Shown: positions 1,369-46,139 of the stretch, piece after piece | Layout: every line of letters begins with the position of its first letter | Numbering within the stretch: the stretch's first letter is position 1 | IMG/VR virus record: IMGVR_UViG_3300013094_000017 | Location: 186,001 to 250,000 of that record | DNA length: 64,000 nucleotides | Direction: 5' to 3' (one strand) | Program-made: the position numbers and the translations under genes | The notes under the pieces: model-generated | Told to the model about the DNA's origin: nothing | The model's database searches: none | Seen by the model: only the letters and a program-made list of their open reading frames with translations

Positions 1369-1420
1369 AATAGTACATCGGCGTTAAACCGAAGCTCCTT
1401 GTGTTTTCTGTATACGCATC

Positions 1421-19424: not shown

Positions 19425-19882
19425 TGGCACACTGGTACGCAAAGGTTAGTAAGGACATTACTCACCTACCAGAGTGTATCGATCACTTCTATAAAGAACT
19501 GGAAGATGCTAAACGCGAAGTTAAGATCTATGGTAACATAGAAAAGGCCAGCGCGGCACTTCCAGGCATTGTAGAGCAACGTTTCAATCAGCTTCAAGAA
19601 ATTGAAGCTGTATTGGAATACCTAAACATTGAACTACGTCGGGTTAGATCTAAGACATTTAAGAAATATCTTGAGAACTATCAACGTGCGTTAAGTTCGC
19701 GTGATGTTGAAAAATATGTTGATGGAGAAGCAGACGTAGTTGATATGGAAAAGATCATTAACGAGTTTGCCCTACTACGCAACCAATGGATCGGCATTAT
19801 CAAAGCCGTTGACCAAAAGCAATGGCAAATTACTAATATTGTTAAACTGCGAGCAGCAGGCCTAGAAGACGCGAGTCTATAA
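19424..19882 (+). CDS. uvsY: Recombination mediator UvsY
   Basis: YQRALSSRDVEKYVDGEADV...KQWQITNIVKLRAAG. Confidence 0.85.
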   Translation: MAHWYAKVSKDITHLPECIDHFYKELEDAKREVKIYGNIEKASAALPGIVEQRFNQLQEIEAVLEYLNIELRRVRSKTFKKYLENYQRALSSRDVEKYVDGEADVVDMEKIINEFALLRNQWIGIIKAVDQKQWQITNIVKLRAAGLEDASL

Positions 19883-21081
19883 TGTACATTGAAGATTTGA
19901 TTGACCGTTTAGCCTGTTACGGGAATTACCTATTTCATTCTCCGTTGACTATTGCTTATGTCGATATTACTATCGTAACTAGTTTATCTGACCAGATACA
20001 ACGAGGCAACGCATACACTGAGAAGCAGCGTGGTTTGGCCTTACGGATAGTATCAAAGTATGTTGGAGTATTATCTGCCGATCTAGGATTTGATGTTGGC
20101 ACATTGTTAAAGAATCCACAGTTTAGTAATCCCATACGAGTAATATCTGGTATTAAATCTATCAGCATTGTAGACCGCGGGACTGGTCCAGTTCTAGCAG
20201 TACAGTTTCCGTATAATCAAGAGCTAGTTGATAATATTAAGAAATATAAAGACAGCTTAACAAATTTTCAAGCAATTAATATCAATTGGAATTCTGAAGA
20301 GAAATATTGGGAATTTGGTTTCACTGAACCTAATATTCAATTCTTATGTTCATTTATTGACATAGGGTTTGTTGCAGACGAGCAATTTCTAAAATACAGA
20401 ACTGAAATACAAGAAATAGAACATCGCATAGATGAATATGTTCCTATCGTAGAATATGTCAATGGACACTTTAGATATCGTAATGTAGTAGATCATATTC
20501 CACAACCTACTTCACTGAATCTTGTAGAAGTATTATTACATGCAAGGCGGCACGGTATTAATTGTTGGGACGAATCTATAGACATCGCATTAGAATCAGT
20601 TGATCCGGTAATATATAAATTTCTAAAGAATTCATCAGGTGAAGTTTCATTTCCGCCCGGTGAAACAGAATTAGATCAAATAAGTGATATACTTACCTTC
20701 TCAGAGAATGTATTATTTGTAATACCCGGCGGCACAGAGATAGATCACTTAAAGTATGTACATGAGTATCTAAACTCATCTAAGTATCAAAACGAACAAA
20801 TGACTGTGATGTTTAGATTAGACAGTAGCTCAGGTAGAATGTGTAATGAATATATTAAAGAACATAAACTAAACACACCACTGTCTGATAAGATTAAATT
20901 TGTTTTTGTTAGTGGTAAGATTCCTAAACCACTAATCGAATCGGGCAAGACCTTTGATGTCATTGTTCACTTTGGTACGAACAGTGCTCATTATACATTA
21001 AAGAATTTTGTTAAGAATCATCACAATGTTATTAGTATGAACCTACCTAACAGAAAAAATAGGGAAATAAATTTTGGCTAG
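19882..21081 (+). CDS. Hypothetical protein
   Basis: 399-aa ORF coupled to uvsY and uvsW. Confidence 0.6.
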   Translation: MYIEDLIDRLACYGNYLFHSPLTIAYVDITIVTSLSDQIQRGNAYTEKQRGLALRIVSKYVGVLSADLGFDVGTLLKNPQFSNPIRVISGIKSISIVDRGTGPVLAVQFPYNQELVDNIKKYKDSLTNFQAININWNSEEKYWEFGFTEPNIQFLCSFIDIGFVADEQFLKYRTEIQEIEHRIDEYVPIVEYVNGHFRYRNVVDHIPQPTSLNLVEVLLHARRHGINCWDESIDIALESVDPVIYKFLKNSSGEVSFPPGETELDQISDILTFSENVLFVIPGGTEIDHLKYVHEYLNSSKYQNEQMTVMFRLDSSSGRMCNEYIKEHKLNTPLSDKIKFVFVSGKIPKPLIESGKTFDVIVHFGTNSAHYTLKNFVKNHHNVISMNLPNRKNREINFG

Positions 21082-22528
21082 TTGTAAAATAGTAATTAAA
21101 GACGAAGTGAATATTAAGATTGAAAATCTCGATCTTGATACTCGCAAGGCCTTGGTTAGAAAATTCAAGTACGAAGATCCAACTGCACGCTATCGTCCTA
21201 GCTATAAATTAGGCAGATGGGATGGTGCGGTTAGTTTCTTTGGCCTAGGTGGTACAACATATCTGTATATGCTACCACAGGTACTTGAGGAACTTGAGAA
21301 ACGAAATTACTATATCGAAGTAGAAGATCTGCGCACTAGTCCGTTACTTGAATTTGATCTAGTAGATGAAGAATATTGGGGTGATTTATGCTGGCCCGAA
21401 GGACACAGATTTGCTGGTGAACCTATTAGACTGCGTGACGATCAGGTTGAAGTTGTAAACAAATTCTTGGAAAATCCGCAGTGTATCCAAGAAATCGCAA
21501 CGGGCTTTGGTAAGACAATTACTACTGCTACACTTGCTAAGATATGCGAAAAGTATGGACGTACTATTACTATTGTTCCAAACAAAAGTTTAGTTGAGCA
21601 AACAGAAGAAGACTTTATTAACTGTAGATTAGATGTAGGAGTGTACTATGGAGATCGTAAAGATTTAAACAAGACACATACTATCTGTACTTGGCAAAGT
21701 TTAAACATACTTGATAAGAAAAATCAAGATGATAACGAACTATTAAGTATTGCAGAATTCCTAGAAGGGGTTAGTACAGTAATGGTCGATGAAGTACATA
21801 TGGCCAAAGCAGAAGTCCTAAAGAAATTGTTAACACACAATATTTCTCATGCACCAATACGTTGGGGCCTGACTGGTACTGTGCCTAAAGCAGAAATTGA
21901 TCAACTAAACATCAAGGTGTCATTGGGCGAAGTTGTACACGAAGTCAAAGCTCACGAGTTACAAGAGAAGGGCGTGCTAAGTAATTGTCACGTTAACATC
22001 GTTCAAACCGCAGAATGGAAAGAGTTTGGAGGGTACGCTGAGGAACTAAAATACCTCGTAACTAATAAAGAGCGAATGGATTTTGTTACTAGATTAGTAC
22101 AGTCAATAGGTGATACAGGTAATACATTAGTTCTGGTTGACAGAATTGAAACAGGACGTATAATAACAGATGCTATCGAAGATTCAGTCTTCATCAGCGG
22201 CAACGTGAAAACTACTAAGAGAAAAGAAGAATATAATGAAGTGGCAATTAATGATAACAAGATTATTGTGGCGACTTACGGTGTGGCCGCTGTGGGTATT
22301 AATATCCCTCGTATTTTTAATATGGTTCTTTTGGAGCCCGGAAAGAGCTTTGTTCGAGTTATCCAAAGTATTGGACGAGGCATTAGAAAAGCCGACGACA
22401 AAGACTTCGTTCAAATATGGGACATCACTGCTAGCACAAAATACGCTAAACGACATTTAACAGAAAGAAAACGGTTCTATAAAGAAGCAAAGTATCCGTT
22501 TACAATTGACAAGGTAAAGTACCAATAA
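21074..22528 (+). CDS. uvsW: SF2 helicase UvsW
   Basis: TGFGKT, DEVH, GLTGT, QSIGRGIR; TTG start. Confidence 0.92.
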   Translation: MASCKIVIKDEVNIKIENLDLDTRKALVRKFKYEDPTARYRPSYKLGRWDGAVSFFGLGGTTYLYMLPQVLEELEKRNYYIEVEDLRTSPLLEFDLVDEEYWGDLCWPEGHRFAGEPIRLRDDQVEVVNKFLENPQCIQEIATGFGKTITTATLAKICEKYGRTITIVPNKSLVEQTEEDFINCRLDVGVYYGDRKDLNKTHTICTWQSLNILDKKNQDDNELLSIAEFLEGVSTVMVDEVHMAKAEVLKKLLTHNISHAPIRWGLTGTVPKAEIDQLNIKVSLGEVVHEVKAHELQEKGVLSNCHVNIVQTAEWKEFGGYAEELKYLVTNKERMDFVTRLVQSIGDTGNTLVLVDRIETGRIITDAIEDSVFISGNVKTTKRKEEYNEVAINDNKIIVATYGVAAVGINIPRIFNMVLLEPGKSFVRVIQSIGRGIRKADDKDFVQIWDITASTKYAKRHLTERKRFYKEAKYPFTIDKVKYQ

Positions 22529-23245
22529 TTAAGTGGCTCGTTTAGAATCCCAATATGCTTTCCGTGCTGCTGACATTCGTTGTTTAGTTTCGTTAGACAT
22601 TACTCTGCCTTTCATTTTATTAGACATGTCTTTTTTCTGAGCATCTGTTTTAGCAGGCATAGATTTACCCTTGTTACCTTTTGATATTTTTTGTTTAGTT
22701 TCTTCAGAGTGTTTATACCCTTTTCTTGATTCTAATATTTTATCAACTGTTGATTGGGCAACAACCTTTCCTTTATGTGATTCTGATAATTTTAGTTTTT
22801 GTTTATCGGACATTGATTTGCCTTTATTTGGACTAGGTTTGCCTTTACGGGCTGCTGACATTTTTTGTCGTGTTTCTGCTGAAACGATTTTACCTGCGTG
22901 ACGTATAGACATTGCCTGGGAAAAGTTTAATTTTGCTATTTCGTAGAATTTACCTTTAGATACATGCCTTATTTGATTGGAATTTTCTACCCGTAGTACC
23001 ATCCACGCAGCGTACCACATCTTGTTAATGTGATCTATATCCTCTAACATTTTTGGCAATAGTATGTGAACTAATCGATGTTCTTGTGCTGTGAGAGAAA
23101 CTAAATTATTTTTATTATTCCCTCCACCTAGACATTTTGGAATAATGTGATGAATTTCTTTATATGTTTCTTTTGATAATTCTCTTGATCTTGCTCGATC
23201 AATGATGCTATAATAACACTTAGTATACTTGTTATCTAAATACAT
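22529..23245 (-). mobile_element. Free-standing HNH homing endonuclease with NUMOD3 repeats
   Basis: EIHHIIPKCLGGGNNKNNLVSLTAQEHRLVH; repeated xSxETxxKMS; own TAAATA and RBS. Confidence 0.85.
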
Positions 23246-23295
23246 AGGTAATGTCCTTTTGTAAAATATAGTATACGTATTTACGGAGATTTAAA

Positions 23296-23799
23296 ATTCA
23301 AATCCTAACTTTAGAAAATAAAACGTACTACCTAAATGATCTACCAGATGAAGTAGATGATGATCTCAGATTTAGTGTATTAGATAATAGTGATTCGAAT
23401 AATCCAGATTACTTTTTCATTCCACTGATCTTCTTAGAATCATTTACCGCGCCGGCAGCAGTATTGAAAGTTGGTCCTTACGAAATTACTATGCCATTAG
23501 ATTGGTGTACTATTGTAGGTGATGCAGACGGTCCTGAGATGGAAGTATTACCATTGACCAGTTTAAATGATAGAGGATTCAAAACATTTTGTTTCAATCC
23601 ATTAGAATCATTTCGCCCGGAACTACTAGAGATTGATATCATTAATGTCTATCAAGATGTCAAATGGTATTTTCCAAAGATGAAACCCGGACAATTATTA
23701 TGCACTCCCTTACACAGCGGTGAGAATCCAACGTGTGCTTATTTTGTTAAAGAAGTAAGTCGTCAGAGTGAAATAGTAGATTACACCAAGTGTTGGTAA
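23296..23799 (+). CDS. Conserved hypothetical protein downstream of uvsW; ATT start
   Basis: Frame is open 56 codons upstream of the track's TTG (IQILTLENKTYYLNDLPDEVDDD...); GGAG RBS 7 nt before ATT; in-frame TAG at 23269. Confidence 0.7.
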   Translation: MQILTLENKTYYLNDLPDEVDDDLRFSVLDNSDSNNPDYFFIPLIFLESFTAPAAVLKVGPYEITMPLDWCTIVGDADGPEMEVLPLTSLNDRGFKTFCFNPLESFRPELLEIDIINVYQDVKWYFPKMKPGQLLCTPLHSGENPTCAYFVKEVSRQSEIVDYTKCW

Positions 23800-23800
23800 T

Positions 23801-24019
23801 ATGATATTTAATAATACAACTGGTCACTATAACACAGTAGTCGGAAATCATGCCTTATCTAACAACAACACAGGAAATTATAATGTTGCATTTGGATATC
23901 AGGCAATGGGATATGTTACTCCTGCAGAACCGTTTACTGAATGGTATAAAGCCGCAGTTAAAGAAAAAGGATTAACTCCACATAAGGTAGATGAAGATGG
24001 CAGAACATTTGGATATTAA
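23801..24019 (+). CDS. Small protein with NTTGxxNxxxG repeats
   Basis: NTTGHYNTVVG / NNTGNYNVAFG. Confidence 0.5.
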   Translation: MIFNNTTGHYNTVVGNHALSNNNTGNYNVAFGYQAMGYVTPAEPFTEWYKAAVKEKGLTPHKVDEDGRTFGY

Positions 24020-26435: not shown

Positions 26436-27272
26436 ATGAAATTACCAGTCTATTTATATACCAACCTATTCGAAGTAATACTAGATTTGGACAACAACAA
26501 TAGGATTAACAACGTTATGTATCAACGCGAGCTAAAATTACAAAAAGGACTGAAGAATACAGTACAGCTCCAGTTCAAAAATAGTGACCAAAAACTGTTA
26601 AATATCTCCTCAAATCAATTCGTTTTCACTCTATTTGACACCGTAAATCAACGAAATCTGATCGAAAAGGATGTAGAAATTTTAGACGATGGTACTACCC
26701 TAGCTTTGCGTGGATTAGGTCAAGTTACATTAACGGAAAGTGATTTAGAAGGTTGCGAAAGTGTATATTATAGTGCTGCTATTAAAGCATTAGACAGTGA
26801 CGGAAGTTATGTTCCTACGTATGCTAACACCTATTACGGCGTTGGTGCTACTGTAGAAGTGCGTCACGATATATTTCCTGTGCTACTACCTAGCCAAGAA
26901 GTTAATAACTTCGATGTGTATTTCAACGCAGATCAAAATGCACAGCGGTACGAATACTACAGTGGCAACCTAAACGGGCATCCAGAGTTCAAATCAAACG
27001 TAGCATTGCACACAGTGGCCACATACATGACCAAATATAAAGGACAGGTCATTATCGAAGGTACCTTAGAAAACGATCCAGCTACATTTGGTAATTATGC
27101 TGTTATCAGCACCAAAACATATAATGGCGCTTCGGGTATCGATTACACAAACTTTAACGGATTATTTTCAAAGATACGTATCCGTTACATACCAGCAAAG
27201 AATCCAGTAACACAATTAAACAATGATACCGTATATGCAGGAACGGTTGACAGAGTGCTCTATAGAAGTTAA
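26436..27272 (+). CDS. Hypothetical late (likely structural, beta-rich) protein
   Basis: Late promoter at 26425; ATG 26436. Confidence 0.6.
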   Translation: MKLPVYLYTNLFEVILDLDNNNRINNVMYQRELKLQKGLKNTVQLQFKNSDQKLLNISSNQFVFTLFDTVNQRNLIEKDVEILDDGTTLALRGLGQVTLTESDLEGCESVYYSAAIKALDSDGSYVPTYANTYYGVGATVEVRHDIFPVLLPSQEVNNFDVYFNADQNAQRYEYYSGNLNGHPEFKSNVALHTVATYMTKYKGQVIIEGTLENDPATFGNYAVISTKTYNGASGIDYTNFNGLFSKIRIRYIPAKNPVTQLNNDTVYAGTVDRVLYRS

Positions 27273-36732: not shown

Positions 36733-36994
36733 TTGCTTTCCTTGTTTTGTTAGTGTAAGTGTGTATTATAACACCTAGCCTAGGCCTTGTCAACCACTTC
36801 TTTTTCAACAGTGGCGCCTGTATACTTCTGGCCTGCCTTGTGAATCAATCCCCAAGGATAGTATGTAATAGTTCCGCCCGAAGCAGAAGTTTTTGTAGTG
36901 CCTGGTGTGTTCATGTTATACTCCGAATACCAATTTGCCTAATAAGAACCCTGCAAAAAACAGGGCCACCCAACCTACTAAACGATCTCCCCAG

Positions 36995-37201
36995 TTAGGC
37001 TCCATAGTATTCTGCTCCTTCATCATACTCGTCGGCAGTGTCTTCGTCTTCTTCAAAGAAGCCTTCCAACTCAGTAGCGCAGAAGTCCTCGACAGCCGCT
37101 TCGCTCATTGTGGTCATTAAGCTGGTTGCCAACCACATTGGGTCAACGATGCCTTCTACCATTAGATCATAAAGCCTGTTAGTGTATTTGCGTGTTGCCA
37201 T
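36995..37201 (-). CDS. Early acidic hypothetical protein
   Basis: Cassette leader. Confidence 0.65.
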   Translation of the reverse strand: MATRKYTNRLYDLMVEGIVDPMWLATSLMTTMSEAAVEDFCATELEGFFEEDEDTADEYDEGAEYYGA

Positions 37202-37261
37202 TTTGTTTCTCCGTTGTGTTAGTGTAAGTGCATTATAGCAGGAGTTAGCCCAAATGTCAAC

Positions 37262-37417
37262 CTATGTTCTTGCTATGATAGCCTGTGAGTAGATGATAGA
37301 TCCCAGAACCTCTGCGGAGGAGGTCACTCCACCTTGTAGCTCCCAACCATTGGCCAAGGCTGCACGTATTTCCTTTTCAACCTCTGCTAAGGTACCTGTG
37401 ACAATCTTGTATCGCAT
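37262..37417 (-). CDS. DUF1737-like small protein
   Basis: Manual translation MRYKIVTGTLAEVEKEIRAALANGWELQGGV...YSQAII. Confidence 0.6.
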   Translation of the reverse strand: MRYKIVTGTLAEVEKEIRAALANGWELQGGVTSSAEVLGSIIYSQAIIART

Positions 37418-37418
37418 A

Positions 37419-37676
37419 TTAACCTTTCTCTGCTAGTTCCTGACACCAGACGCATCGTGTGCAGCCTAGGATGGCCTGTCTGCGAGGTTCCGGAATGGCC
37501 TCACCACAGTCCTCACACTCGGTTAGACTTGGTTGTGCCGCTTGCTCTGCTAGTCGACGCTGAACATCAGCTACCGCGTTCATGTTTAGGTGGATGGCGT
37601 GAATCTGGCCTAACTCTTCTTCGGCTCTGTTATCCATGAAGTTATCTTCTTGGTGCAATACATCTTTAGTTGTCAT
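37419..37676 (-). CDS. DksA/TraR-family C4 Zn-finger protein
   Basis: CEDCGEAIPEPRRQAILGCTRCVWCQ. Confidence 0.85.
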   Translation of the reverse strand: MTTKDVLHQEDNFMDNRAEEELGQIHAIHLNMNAVADVQRRLAEQAAQPSLTECEDCGEAIPEPRRQAILGCTRCVWCQELAEKG

Positions 37677-37812
37677 TAGATTTGCCTTTGTGTTTGGTCT
37701 TGCGGGTGAACTTGGTACGGTCCTTCTCTACCTTTGCTTTGAAAGGAAGATCCTTGTTGAATAGTGCATAGTGTCTGCGTACTGTCATTTTAATCTTTCT
37801 GCTCGTTTTCAT
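37666..37812 (-). CDS. Basic 48-aa protein, ArfA-like
   Basis: Manual translation ...LFNKDLPFKAKVEKDRTKFTRKTKHK; own promoter. Confidence 0.5.
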   Translation of the reverse strand: MKTSRKIKMTVRRHYALFNKDLPFKAKVEKDRTKFTRKTKHKGKSNDN

Positions 37813-37996
37813 AGTGTAAGTATTATACTACCTTAAACCTCTGATGTCAACCCCTAAATGAGGTCAAGAGAAAGCCCGCAACATGCAGGCTTTTTCTTAG
37901 GTCTAGCTATATGTTAGGTTTAGTAACTTTACATACCATGCCCTTTCTTCAAAATTGATTTAAGTGTTATCTCTTACTAAACTACATTATACTATC

Positions 37997-38440
37997 TTAA
38001 ACGAATCCTGTCAATGCTCGTTGGTATCGTTCCTCTTGGTGTCGTGCCCAACTCATCTCTAGGCCATGCTGTATACGCTCCCTATCAAACCATTCAGCTA
38101 GGGCAGGAAACTCGATTAACGGTAGTTCTATACCATAGTCATCTTCGAACCAATCTGTTCTGATCTTCCAGGTCTCTGGTACCAAGTTTCGATGCACACC
38201 GATGTTGGTTTCGATCATTAATCGTTTCCATTTGCGAACCAATGTGTTTATGGTATTGGTCCAATAGGTATTGGCCCATGTGTTTGGTTGTGTCCTGGAC
38301 AATGCTTCTCGAGCTTGGTCTAATCGAATGCCCAAGGCATCCAACTCATACTCAGTGGGGAATAGGTTCTTAGGTTCCCAATCGCCTAGATCTAAGGGCA
38401 ATACCACTGCCTCTGGCTCTTTAGGTTTAAACCAACGCAT
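37997..38440 (-). CDS. Early hypothetical protein
   Basis: 147-aa ORF. Confidence 0.6.
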   Translation of the reverse strand: MRWFKPKEPEAVVLPLDLGDWEPKNLFPTEYELDALGIRLDQAREALSRTQPNTWANTYWTNTINTLVRKWKRLMIETNIGVHRNLVPETWKIRTDWFEDDYGIELPLIEFPALAEWFDRERIQHGLEMSWARHQEERYQRALTGFV

Positions 38441-38711
38441 CTTCTAACTCCTCGGGAATGTCATTTAGGACCTTGCGCTTCTTAGTCTCTGCTATCAAGC
38501 AGGCCTGCACTTCTGCATTGCCGTTGGCAAAGCCTATGGCGAATAGGAATGCCAGTGCATCCTCTTTGGTGCTGGGATACTTAAGTTCCACTAGGTCGAT
38601 GTCCTTGTGTCCGCATTTGATTAGGATCTTTACTCGGTGATAACTGTTGGCATATCGAACTTTGAGTTTACCGTCGAGTCTACTAACGCCTGCGTGTGTG
38701 TATGATTTCAT
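38427..38711 (-). CDS. Early hypothetical protein
   Basis: YTHAGVSRLDGKLKVRYAN...IDLVEL. Confidence 0.65.
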   Translation of the reverse strand: MKSYTHAGVSRLDGKLKVRYANSYHRVKILIKCGHKDIDLVELKYPSTKEDALAFLFAIGFANGNAEVQACLIAETKKRKVLNDIPEELEDALV

Positions 38712-38766
38712 AGGTCTTTCCTGTTCTATCAGTGTATAGCTAGTATACTACCATTAGCCCAAAATG

Positions 38767-38940
38767 TCAATAGACTTCTTTGGTGATATAGAATACTTCC
38801 GCGGGATACTTCTCTTTGAACTCATCCGTGCCTGTGAACTTGTTCAGTTCAGTAGCATTGAAGAATACCTTATGCAATGCTGTCTTATGTGTCTTACGAT
38901 CACTGACCGTTAGATAAACTGATGTGGCGCGTCCTGCCAT
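38767..38940 (-). CDS. Early hypothetical protein (57 aa)
   Basis: Manual translation MAGRATSVYLTV...; its TGA stop lies inside the next -35 box. Confidence 0.6.
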   Translation of the reverse strand: MAGRATSVYLTVSDRKTHKTALHKVFFNATELNKFTGTDEFKEKYPAEVFYITKEVY

Positions 38941-38941
38941 G

Positions 38942-39139
38942 TTAGACCTCTTCTATTGAATGTGGAGGAAAGCTGAACTTCAAACTGTTCCTGCCTGTGT
39001 TGGCTGCCTCTGCACGTTTGAATGCTTCAAGTGCGCCTTCTTTAGTATCTGCTTCTACGACGATGTGATCAGTCTCAGTGTGGTTAAATTCATCCCATCC
39101 CGGCATCTCATATTCGTAGCGTACAATGTATCTTGCCAT
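38942..39139 (-). CDS. Early hypothetical protein
   Basis: Start at cassette ATG 39139. Confidence 0.65.
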   Translation of the reverse strand: MARYIVRYEYEMPGWDEFNHTETDHIVVEADTKEGALEAFKRAEAANTGRNSLKFSFPPHSIEEV

Positions 39140-39199
39140 TTTGTTTCTCCGTTGCGCTAGTGTATGTGTTATTATAGCATACACTAGCCCAAAAGTCAA

Positions 39200-39457
39200 C
39201 TAGTATTGCACCACACGCACAATCTGCGTTAAGTAAGCCCAACGCGGCTCACCTTTAGTGTCTGTGTAGTCACAACCTGCACGTCCATTCTTAATGTCTG
39301 CTTCTACGTTTTCTAACGTAACAGTTTCTGCAGGCTCACTGCCAAACCCACTGCGTATAACTACCACGCTACCTGCACGTACATCATCAATGTCAACGCC
39401 AGTGCCAGCAATGCCACTGCGTCTAATTGCGCTAATTAAATCTAATGTGTTGCTCAT
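39200..39457 (-). CDS. Early hypothetical (SH3-like) protein
   Basis: Start at cassette ATG 39457. Confidence 0.65.
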   Translation of the reverse strand: MSNTLDLISAIRRSGIAGTGVDIDDVRAGSVVVIRSGFGSEPAETVTLENVEADIKNGRAGCDYTDTKGEPRWAYLTQIVRVVQY

Positions 39458-39519
39458 TTTGTTTCTCCGTTTTGTTAGTGTAAGTGCATTATAGCGCATT
39501 TCTGCGCTATTGTCAACCA

Positions 39520-39729
39520 TTATTTTTCTTGCATTACAATGTTGTTAGTGCGTAATTGTTCTGCAGCCTGCGCAAATGCACGCACAACATCTTCTTCGTT
39601 GTTATAATCGCTACTAATAAAGCTAGCGTTACGTTGTGTTAGCGTGTCGTATGTAAAGCCTACAATAAGTCTAAACAGACCCTTGTTTGTTTTTAATACT
39701 TTTGCGTGTGCTAGTGTGTTTGTTTGCAT
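39520..39729 (-). CDS. Early hypothetical protein
   Basis: Cassette leader. Confidence 0.65.
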   Translation of the reverse strand: MQTNTLAHAKVLKTNKGLFRLIVGFTYDTLTQRNASFISSDYNNEEDVVRAFAQAAEQLRTNNIVMQEK

Positions 39730-39794
39730 TTGTGTTGCTCCGTTTTGTTAGTGTAAGTGCATTATAGCACCCACACTAACATTTGTCAACCTCT

Positions 39795-40064
39795 TTATGC
39801 CTGTACGCAGGTACCTCTGACCATGTGAAGGCTTCTGCGCCCAGTGCGTGTGCTGGCAGTTAACCCATGTGCATTTAACAATGCTTCCGTCCTTCCTGCT
39901 ACCTTCTCGCCTAGCCCGTGATATACCACCATGCCCACATAGCGTTTACTTTCCCAGGTGCGGTGGTTTGCGCTGTCAGTCCATGCCATGCCTAGCTCTG
40001 CGCCCAATTGTTTGGCCGCGGTTCTTACTGCATTACGGAATTCTAATGTGTTTGCTGTTTGCAT
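39795..40064 (-). CDS. Early hypothetical protein
   Basis: Cassette leader. Confidence 0.65.
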   Translation of the reverse strand: MQTANTLEFRNAVRTAAKQLGAELGMAWTDSANHRTWESKRYVGMVVYHGLGEKVAGRTEALLNAHGLTASTRTGRRSLHMVRGTCVQA

Positions 40065-40122
40065 TTGTTTCTCCATTTGTTTAGTGTAAGTGTATTATAA
40101 CACAGGTATTACCAAAAGTCAA

Positions 40123-40377
40123 CTATCTTTTGGGCCATATGGCGTCTAGAGTCTCTACCTTCTGGCGATTCATTTCCTGGGTGATCTGTTCGTCCTTACC
40201 ATATACTCGTTCGCGGTACATGCGTTCGAAGCAACGACCCAGACCTTCTGCACTCTTATTACCCCAGGAGGTTTCGTAGCGACCATCGTCATTGGTCTTT
40301 AGATCTAACATCTGGGCTATCTCTAGCCCAAATGCTTCTGCTTCTGCGGATGTAGAAAATTTACTTACGATCATCAC
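40123..40377 (-). CDS. Early hypothetical protein
   Basis: AGGAG RBS; GRYETSWGNKS. Confidence 0.6.
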   Translation of the reverse strand: MMIVSKFSTSAEAEAFGLEIAQMLDLKTNDDGRYETSWGNKSAEGLGRCFERMYRERVYGKDEQITQEMNRQKVETLDAIWPKR

Positions 40378-40382
40378 TGCTC

Positions 40383-40706
40383 CTATGCTAGGTTATAACG
40401 ATAGATGATGCCCTGTGGAGTAACCTTCTTAACAAAGCCCAGCTCTGTCCAGTCCTCTTCCAACCAAGCCAATGTCTTAGGATTCTTAAGCCATCCTCCA
40501 TCAATCTTAATGCTCACACCCTTCTTACCATATGCTTCATAAATTTTGCCAGTGGTAATCTCGCCTAATGCCACCATCATCGCATCAACTTGACGGCGTA
40601 GAGAAAATGGATAGTGACTCTTGTTGTTTAGATTGCGTTGACGAGCGTCTTGTGATGCCCACCATTTGTTTGGTGCTTCTTCAGTGTTGAGTAATAGTGT
40701 TTTCAT
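40383..40706 (-). CDS. Early hypothetical protein
   Basis: Cassette leader. Confidence 0.65.
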   Translation of the reverse strand: MKTLLLNTEEAPNKWWASQDARQRNLNNKSHYPFSLRRQVDAMMVALGEITTGKIYEAYGKKGVSIKIDGGWLKNPKTLAWLEEDWTELGFVKKVTPQGIIYRYNLA

Positions 40707-40878
40707 TTTGTTGCTCCGTTGTGTTAGTGTAAGTGCATTATAGCATAGGTATTACCTGTTGTCAACCCCTATCTTATGCCAAGAGAAAGGGCTGTGAACA
40801 ACATTATGTCCACAGCCCTTATGATAGGGTGGGCTTACCGTAAGCCACTACCTCACAAACCACACCCCACGGAGCAAC

Positions 40879-41319
40879 CTATGCAAAGTCTTTGTTATAT
40901 TGATTACGCTTTGCCTCACACTTGTCTTTAAACTCTGCCCAAGTGCCTGAAAAAATTACGTTGTCGTTGTTAGTGCCAACAGTGACAACCTCAACCTTGT
41001 TCTTGTAAACATGGTACTCATATTCCTGCCAATTGTCCACACCTGGCTTAGGTGGATACAAGTAGAACTGCCCTGGACCATCTTTAAAGTGTGCTACCAA
41101 CTGCGCGGCCAAACATCCCATACCATTGGCAACCTTTTCTGTCTTAGCACCCAAACCATTTACAATTGCAATTGGGCTAAGGAATTCAGCAAGCTCTAAA
41201 CCATGTCCTTCCATGTAGCCATCATATTGGCGATATAACTTAATGATTGGCGTGTGCTTCTCTTTGCCATTCTTTTGAGTGTAAGTGTCATAAACCCATG
41301 TTAAACTGCGTGTACCCAT
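40879..41319 (-). CDS. Early conserved phage protein (MGTRS... type)
   Basis: MGTRSLT..YRQYDGY..GHG..L, NGMGCLAAQLVAHFK. Confidence 0.7.
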   Translation of the reverse strand: MGTRSLTWVYDTYTQKNGKEKHTPIIKLYRQYDGYMEGHGLELAEFLSPIAIVNGLGAKTEKVANGMGCLAAQLVAHFKDGPGQFYLYPPKPGVDNWQEYEYHVYKNKVEVVTVGTNNDNVIFSGTWAEFKDKCEAKRNQYNKDFA

Positions 41320-41400
41320 TTTGCTTCTCCGTGTTGTTAGTGTAAGTGCATTATAGCACCCCCTAGGGGTTTTGTCAACCCCTTTAAGCGGGGTCTTACT

Positions 41401-41835
41401 CTAGGAGTCTTGTTCTTCTTCCTCGTACTCAGGTTCATCGTACGGTGGGTCAGTGTCAATAACAACCTTACCGAATGTAAGCTCAGCACCATCACTGCCT
41501 ACTGCAAACTGCTCTTCGAAGTCTACTACGTTGCCACCTTCCATCCATAGGCTGTCCGAAGTATCGTTGATGTCACTAAGTAGGATACACCCAATGCCAC
41601 CTGCATCCACAGGATACTCACGGCCTTGCTCATCCTCATAGTTACCATCACCGTGGGCGGTACTGAAGTAAGCAAAGCGAACACCATTGGCTAATTTGAA
41701 TACACCTTGTGCACCGCGCCAGTTGTCTTGTCCCTTAGGAAAGAACAGCTCACACGCTTCTTGCCACTGTGGGTGCATTACATAGCACAAGTCACCGATC
41801 CAATACTTTCCTGCTGGCATAGTTCCGTAATTCAT
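41401..41835 (-). CDS. Early hypothetical protein
   Basis: YWIGDLCYV...TAHGDG.Y...VDAGGIG. Confidence 0.7.
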   Translation of the reverse strand: MNYGTMPAGKYWIGDLCYVMHPQWQEACELFFPKGQDNWRGAQGVFKLANGVRFAYFSTAHGDGNYEDEQGREYPVDAGGIGCILLSDINDTSDSLWMEGGNVVDFEEQFAVGSDGAELTFGKVVIDTDPPYDEPEYEEEEQDS

Positions 41836-41897
41836 TTTGTTTCTCCGTTGTGTTAGTGTAAGTACATTATAACATCGGTATTACCACTTGTCAACCC

Positions 41898-42113
41898 CTA
41901 GATAGCATCAGCCTCTTCAACGTTATACTGCGTGATGTCGTCCTCAAGGATCTCAATAGCCGTCACACGCACTTCGTTATCAGTGGTCATACCGCCGAGG
42001 ACATTCTTGTAGTCCAAGAGTTCTTGTGCATACTCAAGAGCCTGGTCTCGGTTATCGAACGGTTCGTCGTGTGTGATCTCAGCACGCACTGTGGTGTAGA
42101 TGACTGTCTTCAT
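41898..42113 (-). CDS. Early hypothetical protein
   Basis: Coupled ORF. Confidence 0.6.
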   Translation of the reverse strand: MKTVIYTTVRAEITHDEPFDNRDQALEYAQELLDYKNVLGGMTTDNEVRVTAIEILEDDITQYNVEEADAI

Positions 42114-42316
42114 TCTGCTGTCTCCATTGACATCTCTTGCAAGCGGTCATACGCATTAACAAAGTCCTCGCAAAGCAGACGCATACGATGCATAGCCTGC
42201 TCTTCGCTGTCGCTTAGGCCAATGTCTTCAAAGTCGTAACCGTCTTCTAGAACATTAACGCAATCGCGCAAATCACCTAAGGTGTTTTCGAACCTGCAAT
42301 AACTCATATTAGCCAT
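42110..42316 (-). CDS. Early hypothetical protein
   Basis: MANMSYCRFENT..DL; cassette leader. Confidence 0.7.
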   Translation of the reverse strand: MANMSYCRFENTLGDLRDCVNVLEDGYDFEDIGLSDSEEQAMHRMRLLCEDFVNAYDRLQEMSMETAE

Positions 42317-42378
42317 TTTGTTTCTCCGTTGTGTTAGTGTAAGTGCATTATAGCAGGTAAAACCTGCTATGTCAACCC

Positions 42379-42579
42379 CTAATTAGCAAACTCTTCTATG
42401 CAATCTAATACTTCTTCTAACTGCATAATAACATCTTCGATGTTGTTGTGGATAGTGTAGCAGACATCCTCGTCTTCAGGAAGTGCATCTTTGTAGACTG
42501 CAAATGCTTTCTGTTGCAAGCGGTTTGCAGTGTGAAGTGCTTCGATAGCGGCTTCTAGGTGTTGTTTGGCTAGTGACAT
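42379..42579 (-). CDS. Early hypothetical protein
   Basis: Cassette leader. Confidence 0.65.
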   Translation of the reverse strand: MSLAKQHLEAAIEALHTANRLQQKAFAVYKDALPEDEDVCYTIHNNIEDVIMQLEEVLDCIEEFAN

Positions 42580-42634
42580 AATGTTTCTCCGTTGTGTTAG
42601 TGTAAAGCTATTATAGCACCAATGGTAAAACCTG

Positions 42635-42856
42635 TCAACCGATATAGTGAACTATTAATCCAACTACGCCTGTGAGCAGCATCACACCGTTCACAACGAT
42701 TAAGCTGGCCTTGCGCCATTCTATAGCTATAGCAAACCATATAGCACCGCCTACGCACAGCAACAGGGGCCCTTGTGGGTAGTATCCTAAGCTGTTAACT
42801 GCTGTGCCAACGATTAAGATCGTTGTAGCTATCCATTCTAATATTAAGATTCTCAT
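42635..42856 (-). CDS. Small 3-TM membrane protein
   Basis: Start ATG 42856; three hydrophobic helices. Confidence 0.6.
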   Translation of the reverse strand: MRILILEWIATTILIVGTAVNSLGYYPQGPLLLCVGGAIWFAIAIEWRKASLIVVNGVMLLTGVVGLIVHYIG

Positions 42857-43437
42857 ATGTCTAAAGTACTTCCTAATCCTTTGTGATAGAACAAATGTTG
42901 TCCCACCTTGGTTATATACTGCGTACGGTCTGCCCAAGCCGGCGATACATATGATGCATGATACATTAAAGCCTGCTGTAGGGGTCTTACACGTACCTTA
43001 TCCACCAGCACGCTATGCGCAATCATTTGACTCTCAGCCCACAACACACCCTTGGGCTTGTCCAACTTCTTCTTAAGTGTCCACGAGAACTGTGCCTTTG
43101 CGTGGACTACCTTGCACACACTGTTACCCCAATGGCCCGTCTTGAGTCTGTTTAAGGTTACCTGTGCAACTGCGTATTTGCCCTGCACCGGCTCCACCCC
43201 AGCTTCGTAGTATACATTCTCTGCTAGACAAGTCAAGTCATTTTTTGTGTAATGGACATTCTCATCTGTCTGCACAAGAAAAGCCTTGATCTCACGGACC
43301 TCATTGTGGACCTCAGTGATCTCACGTTGCTGGAACGACAGCAATGCTACCACTGCCGTTCCAGTTGCCGCTATGAGTAAATTACTCTTCGTCAACACTG
43401 TCTGCTTCCCACATCTCTTGGTTTTCGGAGATGGCAA
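42853..43437 (-). CDS. Cell wall hydrolase SleB/Hydrolase_2
   Basis: CLAENVYYEAG, AVAQVTLNR, QFSWT, ALMYHA, VGQHLFY; exact start uncertain. Confidence 0.85.
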   Translation of the reverse strand: MPSPKTKRCGKQTVLTKSNLLIAATGTAVVALLSFQQREITEVHNEVREIKAFLVQTDENVHYTKNDLTCLAENVYYEAGVEPVQGKYAVAQVTLNRLKTGHWGNSVCKVVHAKAQFSWTLKKKLDKPKGVLWAESQMIAHSVLVDKVRVRPLQQALMYHASYVSPAWADRTQYITKVGQHLFYHKGLGSTLDI

Positions 43438-43954
43438 AAGTATCGTCTAACTCTTGCGGTAGTTGATCACGAGCGCCTTGTGCATCACCCCAGTCTTGGT
43501 AGTAGTCATCATTGCCGTCTTGATAGATGCCAGCGAACTGCATACCACCTTCATAGTAGTAGCCAAGCACATCAAAGCCCGCTTCTTCCAAGAACGCATA
43601 AGCGCCTACTGGCGGAGCCCAAGCACTGTCAAAGTGCAGGGTGATGCTGTGGAAGCCGTCAATGGTCTCATTGATCTCGTAGTATTCATCCTCACTGCCA
43701 ACATCCCACTTGGTTCCCCAATTGCTCACGCACCAGTCATACCAAGTGCTGTAGCCATATTTCTCAAGGTTGGCTTCATATAGGGCCTGTAGTTCAGCAT
43801 CATCAGTACCTGGAGCACTGGTGATCATCAAAGCCTCGGGCACAGGAGCGAACTCCTGTAGCAATACCCCACGCTTAAAGGCCTCTTCGACACGCTGGAT
43901 CTGACCAGCATCTTTGTGAGTAAGTGTTACGATATTCTGGCACCAGTTTGGAAT
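43382..43954 (-). CDS. YubB/DUF1281-like ferredoxin-fold protein; ATT start
   Basis: (I)PNWCQNIV...WYDWCVSNWGTKWD...FDSAWAPP; in-frame TAG 4 codons upstream of ATT. Confidence 0.75.
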   Translation of the reverse strand: MPNWCQNIVTLTHKDAGQIQRVEEAFKRGVLLQEFAPVPEALMITSAPGTDDAELQALYEANLEKYGYSTWYDWCVSNWGTKWDVGSEDEYYEINETIDGFHSITLHFDSAWAPPVGAYAFLEEAGFDVLGYYYEGGMQFAGIYQDGNDDYYQDWGDAQGARDQLPQELDDTFAISENQEMWEADSVDEE

Positions 43955-44022
43955 TTTGGGTTCCTACCTTTCTTAATTTGTTAGTGTAAGTGCATTATAG
44001 CACCTTTCGGTGCTATGGTCAA

Positions 44023-44277
44023 CTAGCATTCGTAAAGTTTAACTCCAGGATCTAACTGCTTCAACTCATTCGCCGCCTGTGTTAGAAACTTAAAATTCCT
44101 ACGAACAGTGGCCGCATCTAGCTCGCCATCACAGGTCAAGTTCTCTGGTGATAGTTTGCCATCGATGATATCTGCAATGTGTTGTCGGTCTTGGGCAGTG
44201 GCCAACGACAGAGGTTTATTCCCCCATATGGCACGCCATTGGTTTTCTGCTTGGATAAAGGACTTTAGTGTTTTCAT
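44023..44277 (-). CDS. Early hypothetical protein
   Basis: LSPENLTCDGE motif; cassette leader. Confidence 0.7.
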   Translation of the reverse strand: MKTLKSFIQAENQWRAIWGNKPLSLATAQDRQHIADIIDGKLSPENLTCDGELDAATVRRNFKFLTQAANELKQLDPGVKLYEC

Positions 44278-44343
44278 TACGTTTCTCCGTGTTGTTAGTG
44301 TAAGTGCATTATAGCACCTACACTAATCTCTGTCAACCTCTAT

Positions 44344-44616
44344 CTAGGCCATCTCTACCATGTTAGCAGGCACACGCCAAGCACCTTGTGGTGTATCGAT
44401 AACGATGTTCTTAATAGCGATCTTCTTAACGGTGCCTCGAATGGTTTGACGGCTACGGCTTGAAGTAAACTGGACAGCGTCACCTACACGGAATGTTCTT
44501 AGGTTCAATCGAGCGTTACGGCTTCGGACATACTTGATTGACTCTACGATTGAGTTGATATCCGCATCAGTCAATTCTGAAGTTAGGATTAGTTCATTGA
44601 TTTTGGCTACTGACAT
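44344..44616 (-). CDS. Early SH3-like protein
   Basis: FRVGDAVQF...GTVKKI...WRVP. Confidence 0.65.
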   Translation of the reverse strand: MSVAKINELILTSELTDADINSIVESIKYVRSRNARLNLRTFRVGDAVQFTSSRSRQTIRGTVKKIAIKNIVIDTPQGAWRVPANMVEMA

Positions 44617-44669
44617 AGTCTGCTCCTTAAGTGTTTAAGTGTGTAGTATAACATCGGTATTACCAAATG

Positions 44670-44951
44670 TCAACCTAAAAAGAATTCAATCTCTTTAATA
44701 AGATCTTCCTTCACTGGCTTGTCTTCGTCGCCATGCACATACGCGGCGAACTCCTCTTCATGCCAGCGTTCAAATGTGCTAGTCATTAGCCAATTGAATA
44801 TCTTTTCTGCTGACTCCTGCTTAACCTTAGCGCGGAACGCTTCCAATGCCTTAGCACTGTCGCCTTCTGTCCAGTAGGTAAGTCCGTCTTGCTCAACTAG
44901 CAGGCCTGCTTCGATTGCTAGTTGTTCTGTTGCGGAAAAGGTTGTGCTCAT
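44670..44951 (-). CDS. Early hypothetical protein
   Basis: AAGGAG RBS. Confidence 0.6.
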   Translation of the reverse strand: MSTTFSATEQLAIEAGLLVEQDGLTYWTEGDSAKALEAFRAKVKQESAEKIFNWLMTSTFERWHEEEFAAYVHGDEDKPVKEDLIKEIEFFLG

Positions 44952-45075
44952 GCCATTACTCCTTGTTTAACCTTGCGCCAATCCCAACGTGCCTGTGTGT
45001 ATGCACGACGGCTAAGTGTAAAGCCTGGGCAGTTCTTGCAGGCCCAAGCTACGAAGTGAACTTGCTCTACGTTAC

Positions 45076-45231
45076 TCATAAGCCACAAGCCTCGTAGAAG
45101 CGTCCATAGTCAAAGCGACTGTTCATTGCCTTAGCAACATCTGCAAAAGCCTTAGCCGCTTGCTTGCGTGCATCCAAGTCTGCGATACCTGCTAGTTCTT
45201 TTGCCATTGCAATAAAGTGTTTACGTGACAT
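45076..45231 (-). CDS. Early 51-aa protein
   Basis: Manual translation MSRKHFIAMA...NSRFDYGRFYEACGL; cassette leader. Confidence 0.65.
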   Translation of the reverse strand: MSRKHFIAMAKELAGIADLDARKQAAKAFADVAKAMNSRFDYGRFYEACGL

Positions 45232-45284
45232 CTTGTGTTTCTCCGTTTTGTTAGTGTGTAGCTATTATAACACCGGTTTTACCT

Positions 45285-45913: not shown

Positions 45914-45967
45914 ATCATTCTCCGTTTGTTTAGTTTAAGTGCATTATAGCACAGGTATTACCAAAGG

Positions 45968-46129: not shown

Positions 46130-46139
46130 AATATTCTCC

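What the first reader, a model, noticed from the sequence alone, without database searches (positions are those of the whole stretch)
23296..23298. ATT (AUU) start codon with perfect RBS on a core gene
Seen: GGAG-ATTTAAA-ATT CAA ATC CTA ACT... opens a 167-codon frame. The in-frame TAG at 23269 leaves no ATG/GTG/TTG until codon 57. Established: AUU starts are rare (E. coli infC, pcnB) and are policed by IF3. Together with 43954 and 1368 this gives three cases in one window. Inference: the phage may use IF3-sensitive starts as an expression dial, or may relax initiation fidelity during infection.
Basis: partly seen in the sequence, partly recalled or inferred. Interest (0 to 1): 0.68.

Follow-up and report, generated by a model that had tools for sequence, protein, structure and literature searches.

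The report
Genuine AUU start on phage gene
A conserved jumbo-phage gene here very probably does start with the rare codon AUU, paired with a strong ribosome-binding site, in a layout that replaced translational coupling to the neighbouring helicase gene where a homing-endonuclease cassette sits between them; this is a clear natural case of start-codon and ribosome-site strength trading off, not a sign that the phage loosens start-codon fidelity.

Summary
ATT at 23296 lies 6 nt after GGAGA, behind an in-frame TAG, and opens a 167-codon frame whose first canonical start is codon 57.

The ATT aligns codon-for-codon with the start codon of every homologue examined. Codons 2-56 are under the same strong purifying selection as the rest of the gene.

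In relatives the gene normally overlaps the stop of the upstream helicase (TAATG), with ATG and a weak SD. In the window an HNH/NUMOD3 homing endonuclease (minus strand) sits between them. It carries an early-type promoter (TTGATC-N15-TGcTATAAT), a strong SD and ATT.

Across IMG/VR, every allele of this gene with a strong SD has ATT (one CTG). GGAGA plus ATG never occurs for this gene. A second, more distant clade repeats the rule with ATT, CTG, ATC and ATA, mostly without an endonuclease.

The best reading is a real AUU start kept by selection as the weak half of a strong-SD/weak-start initiation region that holds output down.

Global relaxation of initiation fidelity is not supported: only 2-3 of about 285 genes are affected, and there is no IF3 homologue or initiator tRNA.

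Reads could not be checked.

The protein has a Hint (intein-like) fold.

The parts
21074..22528 (+). UvsW-like DNA helicase gene (484 codons, TTG start, TAA stop at 22526-22528). In most relatives its stop overlaps the start of the downstream gene (TAATG).
   Evidence: PHROG/Pfam ResIII, DEAD and Helicase_C matches. Synteny in Phosso, PA5oct, Atu_ph07 and 121Q. Junctions in 55 coupled alleles.
22529..23245 (-). Free-standing HNH/NUMOD3 homing endonuclease gene (238 codons). It is inserted exactly between the helicase stop and the downstream gene and is absent from the closest relatives L005 and L006.
   Evidence: phrog_655 at 6.5e-42 and NUMOD3 at 5.9e-20. Homologues at 59-70% identity sit at the same site and orientation in L026/29, L028, L033 and L044. 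Remnants are seen in L182/196/207 and in L173, L176 and L187.
23185..23214 (+). Sigma-70-like promoter with an extended -10 (TTGATC, 15 nt, TGcTATAAT). It is embedded antisense in the first codons of the endonuclease, 81 nt upstream of the ATT.
   Evidence: Consensus scan, 10 of 12 matches. It is the same class as 20 other TTGAC-N14-16-TGnTATAAT sites in the genome, against 0.25 expected. It is conserved in endonuclease-bearing loci and kept in endonuclease-less derivatives L176, L173, L182 and L187. Its function is inferred, not shown.
23285..23289 (+). Shine-Dalgarno GGAGA, 6 nt before the start codon.
   Evidence: Sequence. Duplex energy is -6.6 kcal/mol. Every ATT or CTG allele has GGAGA 6-7 nt upstream.
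23296..23298 (+). ATT (AUU) initiation codon.
   Evidence: It aligns with the annotated or aligned start codon of all homologues. ATT recurs in at least 14 distinct alleles of this clade and 7 of a second clade.
23296..23799 (+). Gene for a 167-residue protein with a Hint (intein-like) fold (phrog_11279), function unknown.
   Evidence: phrog_11279 at 5.5e-45, residues 2-156 on profile positions 2-155. AlphaFold model with pLDDT 92.6. Foldseek and VIA-align give Z 10-12.7 to about 70 intein, Hedgehog and BIL chains. Purifying selection acts on codons 2-56.
23269..23271 (+). In-frame TAG that closes the frame upstream of the ATT.
   Evidence: Sequence.
23464..23466 (+). TTG at codon 57, the first canonical in-frame start codon. 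It is an ordinary Leu codon, not a start.
   Evidence: SD energy is -2.0 kcal/mol. Codon 57 is TTA, CTA, CTT, CTG or TTG across alleles, and TTG in only 2 of 17 non-ATG alleles.

Best explanation
ATT at 23296 is the real initiation codon of a conserved gene for a Hint-fold protein.

In the common, apparently ancestral arrangement the gene is translated by coupling to the upstream helicase gene. Stop and start overlap as TAATG, the start is ATG, and the SD is weak.

In the window's lineage a free-standing HNH homing-endonuclease cassette sits between the two genes on the opposite strand, and coupling is gone. The gene is now served by a self-contained module: an early-type extended -10 promoter embedded in the endonuclease's 5' codons, an unstructured A/U-rich leader, a strong SD (GGAGA, 6 nt) and the weak start AUU.

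The weak start is not a tolerated defect. Selection holds it as the counterweight to the strong SD, and probably to the private promoter, so that initiation stays at the low level that coupling used to give.

What is shown: positional homology, conservation of the N-terminus, the exclusive strong-SD/weak-start association, and its repetition in a second clade. What is inferred: initiation with fMet at AUU, low output, promoter activity and IF3 sensitivity.
For: 1. Start position. Annotated homologue starts in Phosso, Atu_ph07 and 121Q (ATG) and in PA5oct (TTG) align exactly with the ATT; compare M-K/N-I-L-T with I-Q-I-L-T. The same holds in 79 IMG/VR loci at 81-96% identity.

2. N-terminus is translated. 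For codons 2-56, pN is 0.03-0.15 with pS 0.7-1.1, the same as codons 57-167. All alleles have intact frames.

3. No alternative start. In 17 non-ATG alleles the first canonical codon falls anywhere from codon 4 to 66, without an SD.

4. Association in the unbiased sample. Coupled alleles are 55 ATG and 0 non-ATG. Uncoupled alleles are 4 ATG and 10 non-ATG (8 ATT, 1 CTG, 1 GTG; Fisher 3e-9). In that sample SD energy is -4.5 to +1.9 for ATG alleles and -6.6 to -8.7 for ATT and CTG alleles, and the GTG allele is intermediate at -5.6. The further ATT alleles came from a scan that required GGAGA, so their SD strength is no independent evidence.

5. Whole-collection control. GGAGA-N5-7-ATH plus the gene's 5' codons found at least 16 loci of this gene. 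All are ATT, none ATA or ATC. The same pattern with ATG found 54 stretches, none of them this gene.

6. ATT persists through endonuclease decay. Spacers of 803, 244, 183, 167, 63, 46, 25 and 14 nt all keep GGAGA and ATT, although synonymous sites are saturated.

7. Held-out clade at about 57% identity. Among 60 distinct loci, all 12 near-cognate starts (7 ATT, 2 CTG, 2 ATC, 1 ATA) have SD at or below -6.4, against 2 of 44 ATG alleles (p = 1.6e-10). Only one of the 12 has an endonuclease.

8. Phylogenetic control. In independent pairs on a 156-row tree, the traits move the same way in 8.5 pairs and the opposite way in 0, p about 0.004.

9. Literature. AUU gives 6-8 times less reporter than AUG in E. 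coli (PMC3592434). Weak starts tend to be compensated by stronger SDs (PMC5622118). Free-standing endonucleases in T4 carry embedded promoters for downstream genes (PMC2988022).
Against: No direct evidence of translation exists: no reads, RNA, ribosome profiling or proteomics. The host is unknown because the genome is a metagenomic contig.

The base itself could not be checked against reads. The only contig with this exact sequence is the source contig.

The claim of low output is an inference from E. coli data.

In the distant relative 121Q the gene has AAGGAG plus ATG, so a strong initiation region is not universally harmful for this family.

Part of the ATT sharing may be identity by descent of one mobile cassette rather than repeated selection. 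The gene tree is noisy because synonymous sites are saturated.

Sigma-70-like hits in 22300-23900 are no more frequent than in shuffles: 5 against 7.3.
Confidence: 0.72

Rival explanations
1. The weak start is kept mainly because it protects against the homing endonuclease. The G-to-T change destroys, or turns into a non-cleavable operator, the right half of the endonuclease's target at the helicase/gene junction. The strong SD is then a secondary compensation for the damaged start codon.
For: All seven distinct alleles with the minus-strand endonuclease have a non-ATG start: WIN, L026/29, L028, L033, L044 and L375. Short 'scar' alleles without the endonuclease keep ATT. I-TevI binds an operator resembling its homing site without cutting it (PMC2988022).
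Against: L033 has CTG, which keeps the G that ATT loses. What the alleles share is a weak start, not a particular base. In the second clade 11 of 12 near-cognate alleles have no endonuclease nearby. The insertion itself already splits the presumed target. The endonuclease's target is unknown.
Confidence: 0.15
2. The gene is N-terminally truncated or decaying. Translation starts at a downstream canonical codon (TTG at codon 57 or ATG at codon 73), and the first 56 codons are an untranslated relic.
For: Standard ORF finders report 23464-23799, 111 aa.
Against: Codons 2-56 are under the same purifying selection as the rest of the gene. They form the first strands of a confidently predicted single domain. 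Codon 57 is not conserved as a start and has no SD. All 26 or more non-ATG alleles keep the full frame open.
Confidence: 0.04
3. Assembly or sequencing error: the true codon is ATG.
For: The genome is a single metagenomic contig, and reads could not be inspected.
Against: The same ATT, after the same GGAGA, occurs in at least 14 other distinct alleles from independent metagenomes. The GGAGA-plus-ATG combination never occurs for this gene. An error would have to hit exactly this base and yield exactly the state typical of this cassette.
Confidence: 0.03
4. The phage globally relaxes start-codon fidelity, for example by acting on IF3, so that many genes can use AUU.
For: Two or three unusual starts lie in one 64-kb window.
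Against: A genome-wide scan of about 285 genes found only 23296 and 43954 as strong-SD AUH codons far upstream of the first canonical start. No IF3_N or IF3_C homologue was found. The two phage tRNA-Met lack initiator features. Contigs with ATT at this gene have ATG at the sheath gene. The ATT is always paired with an unusually strong SD, which would be unnecessary if fidelity were relaxed.
Confidence: 0.03

Closest known systems
E. coli infC (IF3) and pcnB AUU start codons
   Same: An AUU initiation codon with a functional SD limits translation of a gene whose dose matters. AUU is conserved by selection rather than being a defect. Sources: refs 5 and 6 cited in PMC3592434, which also reports AUU giving 6-8 times less reporter than AUG.
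   Different: Here AUU is polymorphic within one gene family: roughly 10-20% of alleles, with the rest ATG. It switches together with the architecture of the initiation region. No feedback loop like IF3 autoregulation is known or implied. IF3 dependence is untested and the host is unknown.
Start-codon/Shine-Dalgarno compensation in prokaryotes (Belinky, Rogozin and Koonin 2017, PMC5622118)
   Same: A weaker start codon goes with a stronger SD.
   Different: That work concerns GUG and UUG and a weak statistical tendency across genomes. Here the starts are near-cognate (AUU, CUG, AUC, AUA) and the separation within one gene is almost absolute: 0 of 55 against 10 of 14, and no GGAGA-plus-ATG allele in IMG/VR.
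Free-standing homing endonucleases of T4 (seg and mob genes) with embedded promoters for the downstream gene (Edgell et al. 2010, PMC2988022)
   Same: An HNH endonuclease ORF lies in the intergenic space between conserved genes and is present or absent among relatives. A promoter for the downstream gene lies inside the endonuclease coding region. An opposite-strand case (segD) is known, and segE sits next to uvsW.
   Different: Here the cassette also replaces the downstream gene's ribosome site and start codon, with ATG going to ATT. I found no description of such a change in that review or in my paper searches. Activity and target of this endonuclease are untested.
Inteins and Hint domains (for the encoded protein, not the start codon)
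   Same: The predicted fold matches about 70 intein, Hedgehog and BIL structures at Z 10-12.7 over 130-140 residues.
   Different: It is a stand-alone 167-residue ORF with no exteins and begins with Met. No Pfam Hint or intein match and no sequence-level PDB match were found.

Membership tests
Natural AUU (near-cognate) initiation codons of the infC/pcnB type | The AUU occupies the position homologous to the start codon of orthologues. | tested here: met
   Four annotated phages and 79 IMG/VR loci align start-to-start.
Natural AUU (near-cognate) initiation codons of the infC/pcnB type | No canonical in-frame start could give the conserved N-terminus, and the N-terminus is under protein-level constraint. 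| tested here: met
   A TAG lies 9 codons upstream and the first canonical codon is codon 57. For codons 2-56 pN is far below pS. Alternative starts are inconsistent across alleles.
Natural AUU (near-cognate) initiation codons of the infC/pcnB type | A Shine-Dalgarno sequence lies at functional spacing. | tested here: met
   GGAGA lies 6 nt upstream, at -6.6 kcal/mol, in an unstructured region.
Natural AUU (near-cognate) initiation codons of the infC/pcnB type | AUU is conserved by selection among orthologues. | tested here: met
   At least 14 distinct ATT alleles exist although synonymous sites are saturated. No ATA or ATC allele, and no strong-SD ATG allele, occurs in this clade.
Natural AUU (near-cognate) initiation codons of the infC/pcnB type | Initiation at AUU with fMet is shown biochemically, and it is repressed by IF3. 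| not testable with these tools
   No reads, RNA, ribosome profiling or proteomics are available.
Free-standing homing-endonuclease cassette (T4 seg/mob type) | An HNH or GIY-YIG ORF lies between conserved genes and is patchily present among close relatives. | tested here: met
   HNH and NUMOD3 matches. It is absent in the sister alleles L005 and L006, present in 5 other loci, and decayed in others.
Free-standing homing-endonuclease cassette (T4 seg/mob type) | A promoter for the downstream gene is embedded in the endonuclease ORF. | tested here: inconclusive
   A near-consensus extended -10 promoter lies at 23185-23214. It is conserved and retained in endonuclease-less remnants. No transcript data exist.
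Free-standing homing-endonuclease cassette (T4 seg/mob type) | Site-specific cleavage of the endonuclease-less allele, and homing. | not testable with these tools
   This needs an enzyme assay or co-infection crosses.
Intein / Hint domain | Hint fold. | tested here: met
   Z 10-12.7, rmsd 2.7-3.5 A, 117-142 residues aligned, 73 chains at Z 8 or more. Model pLDDT is 92.6.
Intein / Hint domain | Inserted in a host protein, with a nucleophile at residue 1 and the splicing sequence motifs. | tested here: not met
   It is a stand-alone ORF that begins with Met or Ile. No Pfam intein or Hint match and no PDB sequence match were found. Individual catalytic positions were not mapped.

The most novel reading that the evidence does not exclude
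This gene family is a natural titration experiment. Its translation initiation rate is under such tight stabilising selection that whenever coupling to the upstream gene is broken and a promoter plus strong SD is supplied, the start codon is driven to a near-cognate triplet (AUU, less often CUG, AUC or AUA). In this clade the break is caused by a homing-endonuclease cassette. In that case a mobile element would carry a portable 'promoter, SD, AUU' module that rewires, and perhaps makes IF3-dependent, the expression of its host's neighbouring gene.
Probability: 0.35. Interest if true: 0.7.

Novelty: new member of a known kind. Interest (0 to 1): 0.5.

Why it matters
Gene callers that allow only ATG, GTG and TTG truncate this conserved protein to 111 residues. 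The same will happen in roughly 10-20% of its relatives, so annotation of this very abundant environmental jumbo-phage group is systematically wrong at this locus.

Biologically, the locus is an unusually clean natural demonstration that start-codon strength and SD strength are traded against each other. It also shows how a genome absorbs a homing-endonuclease insertion that destroys translational coupling.

It offers a ready set of natural variants (ATG with a weak SD, GTG with a medium SD, ATT or CTG with a strong SD) for testing quantitative models of bacterial initiation and IF3 discrimination.

Tried and rejected
An exact 44-mer with NNN at the start codon found only the source contig in metagenome contigs.
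- Megablast of the locus against cultured phages: no match.
- Co-conversion tract: I compared 5' segments of the gene between WIN, other ATT alleles and the sister ATG alleles. No mosaic was visible, and synonymous saturation makes the test weak.
- Alternative readings of the frame. A 6-codon mini-ORF (ATG 23251 to TAG 23271) lies in the same frame. Read-through of that TAG would add 15 residues that no homologue has, so I rejected it.
- Phage-encoded IF3 or initiator tRNA: none found. The genome is estimated to be only 73% complete.
- Pfam and PDB sequence searches for the protein: nothing significant. Only the fold search was informative.
- The case at 43954: IMG/VR holds only one identical copy and one weak relative, so no allele series is available.

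Full report
**What is in the sequence**

The finding's coordinates are exact.
- GGAGA lies at 23285-23289.
- Six A/T bases follow, then ATT at 23296-23298.
- An in-frame TAG lies at 23269-23271.
- There is no ATG, GTG or TTG before TTG at 23464 (codon 57).
- The stop is at 23797-23799, giving 167 codons.

The initiation region is unstructured: minimum free energy -4.4 kcal/mol, weaker than 190 of 200 shuffles.

The window is part of a single 259,419-bp metagenomic virus contig. It has 39.5% G+C and an estimated completeness of 73%. It is a jumbo phage related to PA5oct, Phosso, Atu_ph07 and the Rak2-like phages.

**Is the ATT the start?**

The product matches phrog_11279 from residue 2 to profile position 2. 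In four annotated phages the homologue's CDS begins exactly where the tblastn match to residue 1 begins: ATG in Phosso, Atu_ph07 and 121Q, and TTG in PA5oct. The N-termini align as M-K/N-I/V-L-T against I-Q-I-L-T.

An IMG/VR scan gave 80 loci at 81-96% identity. At the aligned position 69 have ATG, 8 ATT, 1 CTG and 1 GTG.

Codons 2-56 are translated. Between the window and its relatives pN is 0.03-0.15 while pS is 0.7-1.1 (saturated), the same as for codons 57-167. Every allele keeps the frame open.

No alternative start is shared by the non-ATG alleles. Their first canonical codon lies anywhere from codon 4 to codon 66 and never has an SD. Codon 57 is just a Leu codon, TTG in 2 of 17.

In most relatives the gene directly follows a UvsW-like helicase gene. 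The helicase stop overlaps the start (TAATG), and only a weak AAGGT or AAAGT lies upstream.

In the window a 238-codon HNH/NUMOD3 homing endonuclease lies on the opposite strand at 22529-23245. It is inserted exactly after the helicase TAA. The two closest relatives (L005 and L006, 96% and 93% protein identity) lack it and have the coupled ATG arrangement.

Homologues of the endonuclease at 59-70% identity sit at the same place and orientation in L026/29, L028, L033 and L044. All of these have ATT, except L033, which has CTG.

Other loci show the endonuclease decaying: a 39-residue remnant, then spacers of 183, 167, 63, 46, 44, 25 and 14 nt. Every one keeps GGAGA-N6/7-ATT.

About 80 nt upstream of the ATT is a near-consensus extended -10 promoter, TTGATC-N15-TGcTATAAT at 23185-23214. 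It lies inside the endonuclease's first codons.
- It belongs to the class found 21 times in this genome, against 0.25 expected, usually about 30 nt before gene starts.
- It is conserved in the other endonuclease-bearing loci.
- It is retained in derivatives that have lost the endonuclease, such as L176, whose 63-nt spacer is essentially promoter plus SD plus ATT.

This matches what is described for T4 free-standing endonucleases, which carry promoters for the downstream gene (PMC2988022).

**The rule that emerges**

| Test | Result |
|---|---|
| Unbiased sample, coupled alleles | 55 ATG, 0 non-ATG |
| Unbiased sample, uncoupled alleles | 4 ATG, 10 non-ATG (Fisher 3e-9) |
| SD energy, ATG alleles | -4.5 to +1.9 kcal/mol |
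| SD energy, the GTG allele | -5.6 kcal/mol |
| SD energy, ATT and CTG alleles (unbiased sample) | -6.6 to -8.7 kcal/mol |
| IMG/VR scan, GGAGA-N5-7-ATH plus the gene's first codons | at least 16 loci of this gene, all ATT |
| IMG/VR scan, same pattern with ATG | 54 stretches, none this gene |

The four uncoupled ATG alleles have weak or no SD.

On a gene tree the non-ATG alleles are scattered, and well-supported branches force at least 4 changes. Either the module moves by recombination or it arose repeatedly.

As a held-out test I sampled a more distant clade (about 57% identity), in which a gene of about 110 residues lies between the helicase and this gene.
- Among 60 distinct loci there are 44 ATG, 7 ATT, 2 CTG, 2 ATC, 1 ATA, 1 GTG and 1 TTG, plus 2 whose aligned start was mis-registered by one codon.
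- All 12 near-cognate starts have SD at or below -6.4, against 2 of 44 ATG alleles (p = 1.6e-10).
- Of the non-ATG loci whose upstream region I inspected, only L375 has an endonuclease. Several non-ATG alleles again show a TGnTATAAT-like element before the SD.

With both clades on one tree, phylogenetically independent pairs that differ in SD strength differ in start-codon class the same way in 8.5 cases and the opposite way in 0, p about 0.004.

**Interpretation**

The ATT is a genuine initiation codon, and it is under selection. Synonymous sites are saturated among the ATT alleles, yet in this clade the T of ATT never drifts to G, A or C. The one departure is to another weak start, CTG.

The property shared by ATT, CTG, ATC and ATA is weak initiation. 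In E. coli reporters AUU gives 6-8 times less product than AUG (PMC3592434). A general tendency for weak starts to be accompanied by stronger SDs is known (PMC5622118).

I therefore read the locus as dose homeostasis. The gene is normally expressed at the low level that re-initiation after the helicase gene allows. When coupling is broken and an independent promoter and strong SD take over, the start codon is held weak. In this clade the break is caused by the endonuclease cassette.

That AUU initiation is policed by IF3 is established for E. coli infC and pcnB, but it is only an inference here.

A rival reading is that the mutated start protects the junction from the endonuclease. It fits the perfect co-occurrence with the minus-strand endonuclease. 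It is weakened by the CTG allele, which keeps the G, and by the second clade, where endonucleases are mostly absent. I give it about 0.15.

**What is not supported**

There is no sign of a global loosening of start-codon choice.
- A genome-wide scan of about 285 genes finds only 23296 and 43954 as strong-SD AUH codons far upstream of the first canonical start.
- There is no IF3_N or IF3_C homologue.
- The genome's 22 tRNAs include two tRNA-Met(CAT), and neither has initiator features.
- Contigs with ATT at this gene have ATG at the sheath gene.

**The two companion sites**

At 43954 (minus strand) the ATT is well supported. It has an SD of -7.8 kcal/mol. The CDS start of the Roseobacter phage CRP-207 homologue aligns with it. 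A consensus early promoter ends 39 nt upstream, whereas the first canonical start is 129 nt away.

At 1368 the gene is the tail sheath. The homologues' ATG aligns with ATC at 1368-1366, which is preceded by ATT at 1371-1369. The SD, however, is 23 nt upstream, and a small conserved hairpin lies between them. This is a different arrangement, and I do not count it as the same phenomenon.

**The protein**

An AlphaFold model built on 50 diverse homologues has pLDDT 92.6 and is all-beta. Its best structural matches are almost exclusively inteins, Hedgehog autoprocessing domains and bacterial intein-like domains. VIA-align gives Z 10-12.7 over 130-140 residues, with 73 chains at Z 8 or more.

There is no sequence-level match, and it is a stand-alone ORF. 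I call it a protein with a Hint-like fold and unknown function, not an intein.

**Limits**

The base at 23298 could not be checked against reads. There are no expression data. The host is unknown. The promoter is a consensus match supported by conservation only. The second pattern-selected set of ATT alleles was chosen for having GGAGA, so SD statistics rest on the two unbiased samples only.

Noticed in passing
window 1366-1400, minus strand: The tail-sheath gene (phrog_11196) has no canonical start at the conserved N-terminus. In 62 of 80 relatives an ATG aligns with ATC at 1368-1366, which is preceded by ATT at 1371-1369. The window and at least 5 distinct relatives (L098, L099, L113/114, L124, L129/130) instead carry AAGGAG(G) at 1400-1395, a small conserved hairpin (7 pairs, little covariation), and an out-of-frame ATG or TTG (1378-1376) 10 nt before the aligned start. 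At the aligned start they have ATC, ATA or ATT, but L113/114 have TCG. This could be a split ribosome site like T4 gene 38 (from memory), or a short uORF with a +1 shift. It is unresolved.
   Followed up: partly
window 43952-43954 (ATT) and 43994-44022 (promoter), minus strand: This is a second probable ATT start. The SD is -7.8 kcal/mol, and the first canonical start (TTG 43864) lies 30 codons downstream. The CDS start of the Roseobacter phage CRP-207 homologue aligns with the ATT. A consensus TTGACC-N14-TGcTATAAT promoter ends 39 nt upstream. Only one identical copy exists in IMG/VR, so there is no allele series.
   Followed up: partly
window 23296-23799: The encoded 167-residue protein (phrog_11279, unknown function, conserved downstream of the helicase in the PA5oct, Rak2, Atu_ph07 and Phosso records inspected) is predicted with high confidence to have a Hint (intein-like) fold. 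It is stand-alone and has no detectable intein sequence motifs.
   Followed up: partly
window about 36765-46365, minus strand: About 18 near-identical early-type promoters (TTGAC[ACT], 14-16 nt, TGnTATAAT) form an array. Most lie 29-32 nt upstream of a small gene's start. The spacers often contain GGTAATACC-like words. Genome-wide there are 21 such sites against 0.25 expected.
   Followed up: partly
outside the window: G000:C1:26830-27966, plus strand: Two open frames with high coding scores lie in the same frame and are separated by a single TAA (27076-27078). The first is Gly/Ala/Leu-rich. This could be read-through, a broken gene or two genes.
   Followed up: no
window 46857-46933, minus strand; G000:C1:218-11989: An isolated tRNA-Met(CAT) without initiator features lies in the early region. 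It is far from the 21-tRNA cluster at the start of the contig. That cluster includes a 92-nt tRNA-Ile(TAT) and one tRNA that ARAGORN could not assign.
   Followed up: partly
L131-L135, around position 1490-1510: In these sheath-gene relatives a GGAGGG SD is followed by a GTG that is out of frame with the conserved N-terminus. A run of seven T lies in between. This could be slippage or an assembly indel.
   Followed up: no
window 23251-23271, plus strand: A six-codon mini-ORF (ATG to TAG) lies in the same frame as the gene, in the 50-nt divergent spacer between the endonuclease start (23245) and the ATT. It is not conserved in other ATT alleles and is probably chance.
   Followed up: yes
window 21074-21081: The first canonical start of the helicase frame is a TTG that overlaps the end of the upstream 399-codon gene (19882-21081) by 8 nt. 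Its true start was not checked against homologues.
   Followed up: no
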